Source: Lytechinus pictus (taxonomy: Eukaryota). Taken from it: a stretch of DNA of 64,000 nt. The notes under the pieces are model-generated. The model ran no database searches and had not been told where the DNA came from. It worked only from the letters and a program-made list of their open reading frames with translations. The position numbers and the translations under genes are program-made. The stretch lies in the NCBI RefSeq assembly GCF_037042905.1, contig NC_087245.1:32984001-33048000 (forward strand). Direction: 5' to 3'. The first letter of the stretch is position 1; every line of letters starts with the position of its first letter. This document shows positions 32,011 to 38,000 of the stretch, in pieces.

Positions 32011-35000
32011 ATTTCTATGACTTTGTCTTTCGTTCTCTCTCTCTTCCTCCCTCCCATTCCCTCTCTCCCTCTCCCTACAATTCAATTAGTTCAAACCTTG
32101 TTGTTCCATGCTTGTATTGTGAGCGCCACCCTGTGAGAGACTGCGTCCGATGTCCGTCAGTGATCTGATCATGGGCAGGAGACTGCTACCCCTCTTGTCG
32201 CGGTGTTTCTTGTGGCTCTGATGATGATGCTTGCGTAGAAGAGCCTCCCGGACCTGTTCTCTCTTGCTCTCATCCAACTGTTCTGACATAATTAACTTGT
32301 CCAGGACAAGATCTAAGGAGGACACAAAAGAGGAGTTCATTTTCACCCACACAAGATAGACACCTACATGTATTTATTTTCTCAGTAGCATCCACTTTAT
32401 GCATATTGGAAGCACTTGGACAGTAGAACTATACAGTTTTTTTTTTTTACTGTATAGCGTGTTGAGCATGTTTAAACAAAAATGTGCTCTATAATGGCAA
32501 AAATGTATGTACAGTATGTTTGCAGGCTTGTCAACTTTTGGGACCAATAGCACCTCTTTAAAAATATCCTGGACCCGCAGCTGTATCTTTGTGTAATGAA
32601 TTTATCACAGAAATTGAAAATAATTGAGGATACCATTATGGGTATCTCCAATCAGAAGTATAACTTAAAATTGACAATCCTCACAATTCAGGTCAAAATG
32701 GGGACAATTTCACATGGCTCACCTGCAATCTGGACTATGTTGTCTGCCTCCATGTCCAGACACACTGTACCGTTAATCAGGCAGTTCCTCAGTTCAAACA
32801 GACTATGAAGAGGCAGTGTCGCTACGTGAGGTTTACTCCATCTGTCTGCATCCACATCTACATCCTCCTCGTACTTTATCCACCTGTTTACAAAGAAGAT
32901 TTTGAAGAAAGGACTTCATCCTGGGTAACCTATTAACAGTTCTCGTGACTTATAATGATTCCACTTTCCCCTACTTAACTTCACCTAAACTTATCTTCAT
33001 CCTGAACATATGAAACTGGTGTCCATCTTGTATCTCTTCTCCATTTGATTTTACCACTCCTAACCTGAGTCTGACCAATCCTCTCTGAAGTCTTATCTAA
33101 AGTCCCCAGCCAGCTTAAGTGTTGTCTTCCCCCTCGACTCTATCCATTCCATTTTATCTGACTAAGCCTAACCAAAAACAACCTGTAACCTTAACCAGAA
33201 GATCATATCCTCAGCATGCTAAACTGTTGCCTACATTGATGTTCTACTCCATCTCATCCCTGACCCTTGATTCATCTTAACCATAGGGCTACAGTGAGGA
33301 CCACTTCCTCAGCATGCTAAAACTATTGCCCAAATTGTCGTCTCTTTTGATTCCCTACTCCCACTTATCCCTGACCCTGATCCATCCTAGCCATAGGGCC
33401 TAATGGAGGGCCACATCCGCAGAATGCTTAACTGCTGGCTACATTGTTACCTCCTCTGATTCCCTACTCCCACTTATCCCTAACCTTGATCTATTGTAGC
33501 CTTGGGCTTCACGGAAGACTACATCCTCAGCATGCTAAACTGTTACCTACCTTGCCATCTCTTTCCACTCAAGCTCTTCCCCGTCAGACCCAACGCAAAG
33601 CTCCTCCATCTCTGTGAAGATCTCATGAGACTCATGACCCTCCTCGGCTTCATCACCAAGGATGAACTTGACCCTCTGAGAAGCATCTCCTGCAAGCAAA
33701 GACAGCATAAGGATTGTGAAAGGATTAAAGGAGTTGTTTCACAAATGGTTTAATGTGACTTCAAGTCATGCATCATACCAATGAACAACCTGCAAGTCAT
33801 TCCAAGTGTGATCTCATTGCTTGACTACCCTTCATCGCCCAAGATGAACTTGACCCTCTGAGAAGCATCCTCTGCAAGCAAAGAAGAGTCAGAGGGGGTT
33901 TCACAAGAGTCCAAAGTCATGCATCATACCAAAGAAAATACAAGTCATTCCAAGTGTAATCTTATCCGTAGACTGCCGTTCATCATCGTGGATGAACCTC
34001 ACTCCCTGTGAAACATCTCCTGTAAGTACGCAGGATATTAAAGATCCAGAGAGGTGTTTCATATAGTCCACAGTGACTTCAAGTCATGCATCATACCAAT
34101 GAACAAACTGTAAGTTACAAGTATTCCATGGGTAATCTACCCGTCATCGCCAAGGATGAATTCAACTTTCTGAGATTGCATCTCCTGCAAGCAAAGAAGG
34201 TATCAAGGACCAAAAGGGTATTGTACTAAGGGATCAAATGAACTTGAAGTCATGCATCATACCAATGAACATACTGTAAGTCATTCCATGGGTAATCTCA
34301 TTGTTAGACTACCCTTCATCACTAAGGATGAACTTAATTTTGTGAGATTGCATCTCCTGCAAGCAAAGAAGGTATCAAGGTCCAAAGGGGTTGTTTATTA
34401 AGGGTTCAAGGTAACTTGAAGTCATGCATCATTCCAATGAACATACTGTAAGCCATTTCTTGTATAAACTCATTGTAACCAGACTCTTCATCACCAAGGA
34501 TAAACTTGACCCTTTGAGAAGCATCTTCTGCAAGCAAAGACGGTATAAGGATTAAATGTGGTGTTTCACAAATGGTTCAAAGTGACTTCAAGTCATGCAT
34601 CATACTAATTAACAAATTGTAAGTCATTCCATGTGTAATATCATTGTTAGACTACCCTTCATCGCCAAGAATGAACTTGACGATCTGTGAAGCATCTGCA
34701 AACACATGGGATATCAAGGATCAAAGGGGTCTTTCAAGGGTTCAAACTGCATGCATAGAGTGAATCCTGACTATGAAGACATCCAAGTGGATATAAATAA
34801 AATAAATAAAAGTTCCTAAAATCTCATTAAGAGACTACCCTATTGTATACTCTACCAAAATTAGGTTTAGGTAGTATTATCAGAAGTCAGGTCCATATGG
34901 GATCATGATCAACAATTGTTTTGTGAATTGTCTATACAGAAACTAGATTGGATAGGATTGGATAGGAATAGCAAAATTCCTACTAAGATTTTTGCTGAGA

Positions 35001-38000
35001 TACCTGTACTCATTGTCTTCTGACAATGTAAGAAAGAACTTCTATTCTAGTTCACATCAATGTAAAAAAAGGAAAGGTGCCGATTCCCAGTCTAAGCTAT
35101 GACTAAACATGGCTTAAACTTTCGCCAAGGATCCATTCCAATTACTTATAATATACATGTAGGCAAGAGCTTGTTTTTTTAAAAAGTAATATTGATGTTC
35201 TTCTCTTATCATTACCGGTACCGTTTTTATCGAGGAGAAGGGCATCTGGTCTTGCATCCGGGTCGCTGTTTGGAGAGAACGCATCAGAGGTGGAGCTACT
35301 GTTGTTGGCGCTACTGTGTGAGCCGTTCTTTTTACCCTTGCTTTTGTGTCGGTGTTTGTGGTGGTGGTGATGATGGTGCTTCTGTGGCTGCTCTTCGCTG
35401 TGTGGGACATGGACACCTACATAGATGGCATGGTGACCTGCATGAAAGAAAGGCAGAGGGCACAAAGAGTGTTGCTGGTCAATTCACTATCTTCAGAATA
35501 AACCGTTTGGGTTAAAATATACAAGATAGACATCTTTGAGGTAATGGGGATGGAAATGTTCACTGCAGCTCTATTCAACTGTTAGATTTCAAAAAAAAAA
35601 AAAATTTGTAAAGTTATCATCTACAGTATCTATAGATGATAACTAAATAGCCAGAAGATTGACTTATTGAATTTATTTACACATCGTAAAGCGAAGGAAT
35701 CGATTTCTTAATGGAATGAGCAAGAAAGAACAGTACGGTATCTCTTTATGAATAAATTTATTTTGTGTCAATAATCATTTTATTTTCCATAACTTATGAC
35801 AACACAATACTTTTTTTTTTTAAGATCATCTTGAAAAATGTATGTCTATGATTATCAAGTTTGCATTCATTCTATCACCCACCCTCTCTCCCTGATGTTC
35901 TTATTAAACTGTTTCCATTTGTTACTATTATTCAATCATTGTTATCTTCATTTAGTTATTTTAATGATTTGCCCTATTTGCTCTTTTTATTCTCCACGAA
36001 ATACCATTGAACCTCTAGCGAACTGCTCCTCATACAAATCTGATGCAATCACAGACCAAAGTCTAACTTTTCTCATCTACAAGTCTAAAACGGAAATATA
36101 AAAAAAATATGCTTTGAAATATAGTTTCCTCCGAACCTTTGTACCAGCAAACGGAAAAGAGCTAGTCATAATCATCCGCATGAATACAAATCATCATCAT
36201 AAAACATGAACTTGTGTATACTGAATATGTTGAAATCATGAAGTATCCAGAAAAGAAATTCAAGATCTTTACAGTGCTGGTAACTTGACTTCTAACAAAT
36301 CAAAGACAATCTTCAGGTAAGAAATCAAGATATATTTCTTTCCGAAATTCTGTCTCGTTTACTTATATTTATATAAATTGCTTGACGTTTGGCAGACAGG
36401 ATGCTGAGGAAAGGTCAAAGGATCAAGAACACCATGCAACGAGCCGAGTCAGATGGTTTAATGATATTATGGATTGCGAGATGGGGCAGAAGGAAGAAGG
36501 GTTCGTCGTAAGTGCTCATGTTCCTCATGTGCATGAACATGAAGAAAGCGTGTTTCCAAGAATGTCTGTGTCTTACTCATTTGTGAACACAAAGAGTGTA
36601 CACATGACCTGGTATCCTTTGGAGAAAGAAATGCATTAGATCGCAAATGAAAAATATCACGCCGTACTGTCCCCGATATGCGCTTTTGATTGTTTGAAAA
36701 TCAAGTTGCAATTGATATATATGGTAAGTTGCATTTGATTGTAACTCATTCTTGGTATAGGGGAGTCACAACCTATGCAGGGTAAAACCAATACATTTTG
36801 GTGCAGCCAGTGACTGGTACTACAATACTGCAAGAAATTTCAAAACTGAGAGAGGCAACGTAGCCCAAAGAAATAACAACATTTCAAAGGAATTAAATTA
36901 TTTTCAGCATCCGACTCCATTTGCCCATAGATCATCTCAGCAGATAATGAGCTTTAAACATGATAATCCAGCTGGAAAATTGAGATGATATCATTTAACA
37001 GTTGCTTTGTGTCTCCCTGCTGAAATGACATACCACAAAAAATAGATAAACTAAATAAATTAGCATGGCTAATACATATACACATTTAATTCATCAAAAT
37101 ATTCATAAGGAAAGATATACAATACTTTGGAACTCGTGGGAACCCAGACACCCACACAGCAAGTAGGATGACTGATAATTTGCCTACATGTAAATAACCC
37201 TGTAATAAATGTACCGAAGTAAGATTTAATAAAGCAGGACCGAAATAGATTCTTTTAATCAGAGATTATCAATCAATCTAGAGTAGATGTTGAAGCACTC
37301 AGTCACACATTAAATCACAACGGAATGAGAGAAGATTATGGATAATGGAGAAACAATAACAAATTGATGAGGGAGAGAAAAGAAAAGATGTAAAATCTTT
37401 ATAGGATTGTAGAAAGTAAGAAAAAGAAAAAAAATTGGAATTATGAAATTTAAACATGAATATCTTAAATTTCAAAACTAGACCATCATAACATTAAAAA
37501 ATCAAAATTATCAGAGGTTGGAGAACTGTTATGCAATACCAATAACATAACACATGGAGCCAAGGATATGTTCAAACAAAAATAAATTTCTATACTTTAC
37601 ACCCCAATAGACGCCAAACAGGCTTTTTTCTTCCAAAGTTTTGTTTTCTTGTTTGTGTCATCAGAAGTAGATGTAGAATTAGCTGTATTAAAACTATTAT
37701 GAAAGGACCTGTGTAAACAGAAGAGGCACCAGAATTCTGTGCAAATTGAATAGAAAGTGATTTGACAGAAAGAGCAAGATAGAGGGAAGTCTCCCTCTGG
37801 GGTCAATAAAAAACTGTTATACACGTAAATACAGTACATAAATCTTAAGTAGATGTAGAACTAGTCGATATGACAAGGACCAAATGTTTCATGTAATCTA
37901 CAAGTTGAAATAAACAGCAGCAATCTATCAAGATATCAAGATTTCATAGGAATGCTCACTGATTCTCCAATCGTTAATGTTGTTTTATTTTTTATTGTTT

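What the first reader, a model, noticed from the sequence alone, without database searches (positions are those of the whole stretch)
33649..34790. Minisatellite built from an exon's own splice acceptor: six upstream decoy or proto-microexons
Seen: the real acceptor plus codons [13 protein letters not shown] form the last unit of a 7-unit tandem array. Every upstream copy keeps a CAG acceptor and has GT (GC in one) at the unit junction. Candidate microexons: 33829-33871 ([13 protein letters not shown], only synonymous changes in full codons), 34485-34527 (same peptide, CAG>CAA and TTC>TTT), 34656-34695 ([12 protein letters not shown], 3-nt deletion), 33977-34019 ([15 protein letters not shown] donor), and two +1 frameshifted copies (34141-34184, 34313-34356). 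In-frame copies share the phase (1-2) of the real exon, so they could replace it but not precede it; replacement would delete ~32 conserved residues. Inference: exon birth in progress, competing decoy acceptors or an NMD switch; neutral recent amplification is also possible.
Basis: partly seen in the sequence, partly recalled or inferred. Interest (0 to 1): 0.8.

Follow-up and report, generated by a model that had tools for sequence, protein, structure and literature searches.

The report
Silent splice-site minisatellite in urchin SLC4
A 1.2-kb tandem repeat in an intron of a sea-urchin bicarbonate-transporter gene copies the intron-exon boundary seven times, but only the last, authentic splice site is used and the six upstream copies drift neutrally. 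This kind of repeat is already known from amphioxus, where it is called a "mirage".

Summary
On the minus strand, seven units of about 148-183 bp (33648-34839) each hold the 3' end of the intron and the first ~42 nt of the exon ([13 protein letters not shown]). The last unit is the real acceptor of exon 33689-33551 of an SLC4 Na+/HCO3- cotransporter gene, apparently of Lytechinus pictus.

- **RNA:** in two RNA-seq runs and one transcript assembly of the same species, all 32 junction reads from the upstream exon land on 33689. All 70 reads into the next exon leave from 33551. Depth over the decoys is zero.
- **Age:** L. variegatus has the same seven units in the same order (90.5% identity). Strongylocentrotus purpuratus has a single acceptor. 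The array is therefore old, not recent.
- **Drift:** between the two Lytechinus species the decoy exon parts change as fast as the intron parts (5.6% against 7.0%, p=0.56). The changes include amino-acid changes, a frameshift in u6 and an indel that removes u5's CAG.

Within-array synonymous bias is nominally significant for u1 and u6 only.

It matches the "mirage" minisatellites of amphioxus. One open lead remains: RefSeq models start at an ATG inside unit 3, and the reads gave this no support.

The parts
33648..34839 (-). Acceptor-side minisatellite ('mirage'): seven tandem units of 148-183 bp. Each holds ~106-144 nt of 3' intron and ~39-43 nt of the exon's 5' end.
   Evidence: TRF; motif scan and MAFFT; collinear ortholog in L. 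variegatus
34657..34839 (-). u1. Decoy acceptor AG ends at 34696. Exon-derived part 34695-34657 has a 3-nt deletion (peptide [13 protein letters not shown]).
34486..34656 (-). u2. Decoy acceptor AG ends at 34528. Exon-derived part 34527-34486 keeps the peptide with two synonymous changes. Closest unit to u7 (86% in the intron part, 93% in the exon part).
34314..34485 (-). u3. Decoy acceptor AG ends at 34357. Exon-derived part carries a +1 insertion (frameshift).
34142..34313 (-). u4. Decoy acceptor AG ends at 34185. Exon-derived part carries a +1 insertion (frameshift).
33978..34141 (-). u5. Decoy acceptor (cttacag) AG ends at 34020. Peptide is [13 protein letters not shown] and the junction is GC. 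The CAG is missing from one of the two L. variegatus loci.
33830..33977 (-). u6. Decoy acceptor AG ends at 33872. Exon-derived part keeps the peptide in this genome but has a 1-nt deletion (frameshift) in L. variegatus.
   Evidence: (deletion at 33838)
33648..33829 (-). u7, the last unit. It holds the authentic acceptor (AG ends at 33690) and the first 42 nt of the real exon.
   Evidence: junction reads
33551..33689 (-). Authentic exon, 139 nt, phase 1 to 2. It encodes [45 protein letters not shown](R), the start of the Band 3 cytoplasmic domain.
   Evidence: Junction reads 33689<-35216/35222 (32 reads) and 33551->32883 (70 reads); Pfam PF07565
35216..35437 (-). Upstream coding exon (His-rich). 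It has two donors 6 nt apart, after 35216 and after 35222, and both are used.
   Evidence: 10 and 22 reads; KNGTGDASQ and KNGDASQ isoforms annotated in two other urchins
32723..32883 (-). Downstream exon ([23 protein letters not shown]...).
33244..33570 (-). Second minisatellite on the donor side of the same exon: ~109-bp units, about 3 copies. The first unit appears to span the exon's last ~20 nt and its donor.
   Evidence: TRF; alignment; present in L. variegatus; absent in S. purpuratus
34447..34456 (-). ATGGCTTACA followed by GTATGT, inside u3's intron-derived part. It is the only minus-strand site in the window that can encode the 'MAYR' start of the annotated L. pictus isoforms and one L. 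variegatus model. No reads support it here.
   Evidence: zero depth
34447..34527 (-). Hypothetical 81-nt cassette from the u2 acceptor to the u3 GTATGT. It is open and in frame (phase 1 to 1) in both Lytechinus species. It is not seen in RNA.
   Evidence: Reading of the sequence; 4/81 substitutions between species; zero depth

Best explanation
This is a 'mirage' minisatellite. A ~170-bp segment spanning the intron/exon boundary of one exon of a sea-urchin SLC4 Na+/HCO3- cotransporter gene was duplicated in tandem, so six copies of the 3' splice site plus 42 nt of exon now sit in the intron upstream of the authentic one.

Shown:
- The array arose in the Lytechinus lineage. That was after the split from Strongylocentrotus and before the L. 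pictus / L. variegatus split.
- The six upstream copies are transcribed as intron and removed.
- Only the exon-proximal acceptor is used.
- The copies evolve at the intronic rate, with amino-acid changes, frameshifts and loss of splice signals.

Inferred:
- The copies stay silent because only the last acceptor is followed by the rest of the purine-rich exon and by a strong donor (AAG|GTAGGT). That favours exon definition and proximity.
- The GT or GC at the unit junctions is a weak, accidental donor inherited from the intron sequence GGTAGTC.
- The array grew by unequal exchange or slippage. Occasional conversion between units explains why u2, u6 and u1 resemble the real exon more than their flanks do.
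For: - Array anatomy.
- Gene identity: consecutive exons hit Pfam Band_3_cyto positions 1-24, 36-79 and 75-143. The nearest proteins are Lytechinus and Strongylocentrotus sodium bicarbonate cotransporters.
- Splicing, raw RNA reads 99% identical to the window:
  - 35216->33689: 2+8 reads.
  - 35222->33689: 12+10 reads.
  - 33551->32883: 23+47 reads.
  - No joint to any decoy, and zero sense-strand depth over the decoy acceptors and exon-derived parts.
- Annotation: none of the L. variegatus isoforms retrieved from the main locus carries a second FILGDE-type motif.
- Age: the L. variegatus locus aligns collinearly over 1,792 columns at 90.5% with all seven units. Paralogous units are at most 86% alike. 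S. purpuratus has one acceptor and no repeat.
- Neutrality between species: decoy exon parts 14/250 against array intron parts 51/733, Fisher p=0.56.
  - 2 synonymous and 4 non-synonymous codon changes.
  - A 1-nt deletion in u6.
  - Loss of the u1/u2 GT.
  - An indel of u5's CAG that differs between the two L. variegatus loci.
  - The real exon shows 4 synonymous and 1 non-synonymous change.
- The unit is not a dispersed repeat.
- Precedent: amphioxus mirages, with 150-160-bp units made of a 3' intron end plus a 5' exon part, do not disturb splicing (PMC3087553, PMC3902484).
Against: - In a within-array simulation the exon-derived parts of u6 and u1 are closer to the real exon, with fewer amino-acid changes, than their intron parts predict (P=0.006 and 0.002).
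- Averaged over all unit pairs, exon parts are 78% alike against 67% for intron parts.
- Decoy acceptor 20-mers changed a little less between species (3/117 against 51/733, p=0.10).
- RNA evidence is two runs of unknown tissue plus one assembly. Use below about 9% of transcripts, tissue-specific use, or products removed by NMD cannot be excluded.
- RefSeq models of two species start at an ATG inside u3.
Confidence: 0.8

Rival explanations
1. The array has started to supply real exons. Either a transcription start or first exon in u2/u3 ends at ATGGCTTACA|GTATGT and splices to 33689 (the 'MAYR' protein start), or an 81-nt in-frame cassette (34527-34447) adds 27 residues in tissues or stages not sampled.
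For: - Annotated L. pictus isoforms and one L. variegatus model begin MAYR|[13 protein letters not shown].
- The only matching minus-strand site in the window is 34456-34447, followed by GTATGT.
- The site is identical in L. variegatus.
- The 81-nt segment is open and a multiple of three in both species.
Against: - Depth is zero over 34443-34539 and no joint at 34447 appears in two RNA runs and one transcript assembly.
- No transcript-assembly protein in the collection starts this way.
- A 10-nt coding first exon is the usual look of an ab initio completion of a truncated model. The locus ranges returned are CDS ranges, so they say nothing about a 5' UTR.
- The L. pictus model may simply have been carried over from the L. 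variegatus protein.
- ACA|GTATGT scores weak on a crude donor matrix.
- An open 27-codon frame, half of it inherited from coding sequence, is not surprising.
Confidence: 0.1
2. The decoys act without being spliced in. As a row of competent 3' splice sites they bind U2AF/U2 unproductively and tune splicing speed, intron retention or NMD of this transporter's mRNA (a decoy-exon or NMD-switch model).
For: - Acceptor 20-mers of u2-u4 and u6 are 70-90% identical to the real one and keep pyrimidine tracts and CAG.
- They changed slightly less between species than the rest of the repeat (2.6% against 7.0%, p=0.10).
- The array kept seven units in three independent sequences.
Against: - There are no intronic sense reads at all in rRNA-depleted libraries, so no sign of intron retention.
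- u5's CAG is present in one L. variegatus locus and missing in the other, so the acceptors are not protected.
- The conservation excess is not significant.
- S. purpuratus does without the array.
Confidence: 0.07
3. The in-frame copies (u2, u6, u1) are kept by selection as coding microexons that can replace the real exon (exon birth in progress).
For: - u2 and u6 keep the peptide [13 protein letters not shown] with only synonymous changes in full codons, and u1 has one changed residue.
- The within-array test is nominally significant for u6 and u1.
Against: - No reads use them.
- In L. variegatus u6 is frameshifted, u2 has Ala to Asp, u1 has Glu to Asp and loses its junction GT.
- Replacement would remove 32 residues at the start of the conserved Band 3 cytoplasmic domain.
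- Part of the synonymous bias comes from the real exon's own synonymous drift. It differs from S. purpuratus at 5 of 13 codons, all synonymous.
- The three 'good' copies were picked after the fact out of six.
Confidence: 0.03

Closest known systems
'Mirage' minisatellites of amphioxus (Adh3; globin genes BflGb6 and BflGb9; troponin C; PGBD5). Sources: PMC3087553, PMC3902484, which cite Canestro et al. 2002, Nucleic Acids Res 30:2871.
   Same: - Tandem repeats whose terminal unit spans an authentic intron/exon boundary.
- BflGb6 units are 150-160 bp, made of the 3' end of an intron plus the 5' part of the next exon, in 3-6 copies.
- Many copies keep AG/GT signals, yet normal splicing is not disturbed.
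- Either boundary can be duplicated. Here both sides of one exon carry such an array.
   Different: - This one is in an echinoderm, not a cephalochordate.
- Units are old and diverged (50-86% alike in their intron-derived parts, against 81-100% overall in BflGb6).
- Copy number is the same in two species and three sequences. Amphioxus mirages vary between haplotypes and even somatically.
Human F7 intron 7 37-bp VNTR, whose first unit spans the exon 7 donor (PMC1557585)
   Same: A minisatellite built from a splice-site boundary gives a row of near-identical pseudo-sites. They are potentially functional but silent, and only the exon-adjacent site is chosen.
   Different: - F7 duplicates the 5' splice site, with short near-identical units.
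- Here the 3' splice site is duplicated in ~170-bp diverged units.
- Site choice has been tested with minigenes for F7 and not here.
Tandem exon duplication giving mutually exclusive or cassette exons, and intron gain by tandem duplication (PMC4974935; the model in Figure 7 of PMC3087553)
   Same: The raw material is the same: local tandem duplication that copies splice signals and coding sequence in the right phase.
   Different: Only the first 42 nt of the exon is copied, there is no proper donor, and no alternative use is seen. It is a possible precursor, not an example.

Membership tests
Mirage minisatellite (tandem duplication of an intron/exon boundary) | Head-to-tail tandem repeat with minisatellite-size units | tested here: met
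   TRF period 172, score 721; seven aligned units of 148-183 bp
Mirage minisatellite (tandem duplication of an intron/exon boundary) | A terminal unit contains the authentic boundary, so each unit is part intron and part exon | tested here: met
   u7 holds the acceptor that RNA reads show to be used. The units align across intron and exon parts.
Mirage minisatellite (tandem duplication of an intron/exon boundary) | Duplicated splice signals do not disturb normal splicing | tested here: met
   32/32 and 70/70 junction reads use the authentic sites, with zero depth on the decoys. Limited to two runs and one assembly.
Mirage minisatellite (tandem duplication of an intron/exon boundary) | Length instability between haplotypes or individuals | tested here: not met
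   Seven units in L. pictus and in both L. variegatus loci. Only small indels differ. Population data were not available, and this trait describes the young amphioxus arrays rather than defining the structure.
Mutually exclusive or cassette exons from tandem exon duplication | Each copy is a complete exon with both splice sites and is included in some transcripts | tested here: not met
   Copies hold only 39-43 of 139 nt. Junction GTs are weak or GC. No inclusion in reads or in the annotated isoforms retrieved.
Decoy or poison exon (NMD switch) | Detectable inclusion or intron retention, and sequence conservation above the intron background | tested here: not met
   No sense-strand reads in the intron. 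Between-species rate 5.6% against 7.0%, p=0.56. NMD-inhibited RNA could not be tested.
SLC4 bicarbonate transporter gene (host gene) | Band 3 cytoplasmic domain followed by the HCO3- transporter domain | tested here: met
   Window exons hit PF07565 in order. Orthologs with exon peptides 91-100% identical carry PF07565 and PF00955.

The most novel reading that the evidence does not exclude
A mirage caught turning into coding sequence. The array supplies either an alternative first exon (ATG at 34456, donor after 34447, the 'MAYR' start in RefSeq models of two Lytechinus species) or an 81-nt in-frame cassette (34527-34447). The cassette would duplicate the [13 protein letters not shown] motif of a bicarbonate transporter, in a tissue or stage not sampled here.
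Probability: 0.1. Interest if true: 0.6.

Novelty: new member of a known kind. Interest (0 to 1): 0.3.

Why it matters
It shows that boundary-spanning 'mirage' minisatellites are not confined to amphioxus. One can persist, with its unit count intact, across a speciation event while its splice-site copies stay unused.

It is also a natural test bed for 3' splice-site choice. Seven similar acceptors sit in a row, the last one wins, and this mirrors the donor-side F7 case. A sister species supplies natural mutants, and S. purpuratus supplies the state before duplication.

On the practical side, such arrays can mislead gene prediction. The annotated 'MAYR' start inside the repeat may be an example.

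Tried and rejected
- **Structured RNA in the conserved intron block:** an Rfam scan of 32500-35600 at E<=1 found nothing.
- **Unit as part of a transposon:** the genome holds no other copy of the unit. Only a 35-42-nt piece recurs, in two copies of a ~2.4-kb repeat on another contig. That piece explains the few opposite-sense reads at 34558-34595, which have unrelated ends on both sides.
- **Other individuals via exact-ORF look-up:** not on record.
- **Assembled transcripts starting MAYR or repeating the motif:** none found.
- **Earlier notes of this scan:** none.
- **Donor strength:** The used donor at 35222 scores -2.0, so strength alone cannot explain the silence.
- **Within-array conservation and dN/dS:** I rejected these as the main test. 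The real exon is constrained, units may convert each other, u1's intron part aligns poorly, and the 'good' copies were chosen after the fact. I used the between-species comparison instead.
- **Assembly artefact:** rejected.

Full report
**What is there**

The gene lies on the minus strand. Tandem Repeats Finder gives a period-172 array at 33914-34746 (74% matches, score 721). Reading the strand, scanning for the acceptor motif and aligning shows seven units between 34839 and 33648. Each unit holds 106-144 nt of 3' intron followed by 39-43 nt that match the start of the exon.

Acceptor AGs end at 34696, 34528, 34357, 34185, 34020, 33872 and 33690. The junction GT is simply the start of the duplicated intron segment.

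**The host gene**

The exons at 35437-35216, 33689-33551, 32883-32723 and the next one downstream encode consecutive parts of the Band 3 cytoplasmic domain (Pfam PF07565 positions 1-24, 36-79 and 75-143).

A search of protein representatives and a follow-up homolog search give sea-urchin sodium bicarbonate cotransporters as nearest relatives. The window's exon peptides are identical to annotated Lytechinus pictus isoforms over the compared stretches and differ by single residues from L. variegatus. I infer that the window is L. pictus or something very close, and that the coded 'organism B' of the read tools is L. variegatus.

**Is any copy spliced?**

- Upstream exon to 33689: 10 reads from the donor after 35216 and 22 from a second donor after 35222.
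- 33551 to 32883: 70 reads.
- No joint to or from any decoy reached the listing threshold.
- Sense-strand depth is 0 in every bin from 33764 to 35121, which covers every decoy acceptor and exon-derived part.

The bounds are below about 9% for use of a decoy acceptor and below about 4% for replacement of the real exon. The tissue of these runs is unknown, and NMD could hide poison isoforms.

None of the L. variegatus isoforms retrieved from the main locus contains a second copy of the motif.

**Age**

The longest L. variegatus isoform led to its locus. That locus aligns with window 35006-33244 in one collinear block of 1,792 columns at 90.5% identity, and all seven units are present in order. 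A second L. variegatus locus, 97% identical and 5.7 Mb away, has them too.

Paralogous units within a genome are only 50-86% alike in their intron parts. The whole array therefore predates the split of the two species. Contigs of the sister species' DNA run bridge neighbouring units independently.

S. purpuratus has the same exon, the same double donor and about 60 nt of recognisably orthologous intron before a single acceptor, with no repeat. The array arose in the Lytechinus lineage and is not recent.

**Constraint**

Within the array, exon-derived parts are on average more alike than intron-derived parts (78% against 67%). Another intronic block (TGTTCATTGGTATGATGCAT) is equally conserved.

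I ran a simulation in which the copy evolves neutrally and the real exon accepts only synonymous changes. It fits u2 and u5. It gives too few amino-acid changes for u6 (P=0.006) and u1 (P=0.002). This test is weak for four reasons:
- u1's intron part aligns poorly.
- Units may convert one another, as reported for amphioxus mirages (PMC3087553).
- The real exon itself drifts at synonymous sites. It differs from S. purpuratus at 5 of 13 codons, all synonymous.
- The 'good' copies were chosen after the fact.

The between-species comparison avoids these problems.

| Compartment, L. pictus vs L. variegatus | Substitutions | Rate |
|---|---|---|
| Decoy exon-derived parts | 14/250 | 5.6% |
| Array intron-derived parts | 51/733 | 7.0% |
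| Decoy acceptor 20-mers | 3/117 | 2.6% |
| Real exon | 5/139 | 3.6% |

Decoy exon parts against array intron parts give Fisher p=0.56. Decoy acceptor 20-mers against array intron parts give p=0.10.

In the four in-frame copies the changed codons are 2 synonymous and 4 non-synonymous. My script misframed u1, so I counted u1 by hand from the alignment. In L. variegatus u6 has a 1-nt deletion, also seen as 'left out' at 33838. The u1/u2 junction GT is lost. u5's CAG is present in one L. variegatus locus and absent in the other. The real exon shows 4 synonymous changes and 1 conservative change.

The decoys behave as intron.

**Mechanism**

The duplicated acceptors look competent, with pyrimidine tract, CAG and branch-like motifs. 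Why they are silent is inference.

- Only the last acceptor is followed by the remaining 97 nt of purine-rich exon and by a strong donor, AAG|GTAGGT.
- On a crude matrix recalled from memory that donor scores +6.0. Most junction GTs score -1.4 to -5.2, and the best reaches +0.5.
- The used donor at 35222 also scores low (-2.0), so weak donors are not unusable in this gene.
- Proximity and exon definition are the likeliest reasons for the choice of the last acceptor. This mirrors the human F7 intron-7 minisatellite, where only the exon-adjacent donor of a row of identical pseudo-sites is used (PMC1557585).

**What it is called**

Tandem minisatellites whose end unit spans an intron/exon boundary were named 'mirages' in amphioxus. 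They are described for Adh3, globins, troponin C and PGBD5.

The globin BflGb6 case has 150-160-bp units made of the 3' end of an intron plus the 5' part of the exon, in 3-6 copies. It keeps AG/GT signals and has no effect on splicing. The authors propose that such copies could become exons or seed new introns (PMC3087553, PMC3902484).

The present array fits this description. My literature searches found mirages only in amphioxus, so an echinoderm case with a diverged, copy-number-stable array shared by two species is a modest extension.

**A second array**

The only other long-period, multi-copy minisatellite in the 64-kb window sits on the other side of the same exon. It has ~109-bp units at 33570-33244. 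The first unit appears to include the exon's last ~20 nt and its donor. It is present with 3.1 copies in L. variegatus and absent in S. purpuratus. All 70 reads use the authentic donor.

**Open lead**

Annotated L. pictus isoforms and the model at the second L. variegatus locus start MAYR|DASQ.... The only minus-strand ATGGCTTACA in the window is 34456-34447, inside u3, followed by GTATGT. The L. variegatus model starts exactly there.

From u2's acceptor to this donor is an open 81-nt segment, a multiple of three, in both species. The reads show nothing there, and no assembled transcript in the protein collection starts that way. I think it is an ab initio completion of a truncated model, but more RNA data are needed.

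**Verdict**

This is an old, neutrally drifting, splicing-silent boundary minisatellite of a known kind.

Noticed in passing
window 33244-33570 (minus strand): A second minisatellite (~109-bp units, about 3 copies) starts at the donor side of the same exon. Its first unit seems to include the exon's last ~20 nt and the donor, so the exon is flanked by boundary repeats on both sides. It is present in L. variegatus (3.1 copies) and absent in S. purpuratus.
   Followed up: partly
window 35216-35222 (minus strand): Two donors 6 nt apart (ACG|GTACCG|GTAATG) are both used, with 22 and 10 reads. They add or drop Thr-Gly (KNGTGDASQ against KNGDASQ). Both forms are annotated in L. variegatus and S. purpuratus, so this small alternative is conserved across urchin families.
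   Followed up: partly
window 34447-34456 (minus strand); L010:3001: RefSeq-type models of L. pictus and of one L. variegatus locus start at an ATG inside repeat unit 3 (MAYR...). They omit the upstream exons ([10 protein letters not shown]... at about window 51060, and the His-rich exon 35437-35216), although RNA reads join the latter to this exon. This is probably an annotation artefact caused by the repeat.
   Followed up: partly
L009 and L010 (L. variegatus CM031015.1, about 65.22 Mb and 59.54 Mb): The L. variegatus assembly holds two ~97% identical copies of this whole SLC4 gene 5.7 Mb apart. They are either a recent segmental duplication or an uncollapsed haplotype. Their differences inside the array are confined to units u3-u5, while u1, u2, u6 and u7 are identical.
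   Followed up: no
window 34558-34595; L007/L008 (another contig of the same genome): A 35-42-nt piece of the unit (GCATGACTTGAAGTCAC...TTTGTGAAA) recurs in two copies of a ~2.4-kb repeat elsewhere in the genome. It attracts opposite-sense RNA reads whose both ends do not match the window, so these reads come from an expressed element elsewhere.
   Followed up: partly
window 34086-34555 (plus strand): The repeat creates three similar 43-49-codon ORFs on the opposite strand (MHHTNE.../MHHSNE...). No reads support them, and they look like a by-product of the repetition.
   Followed up: no
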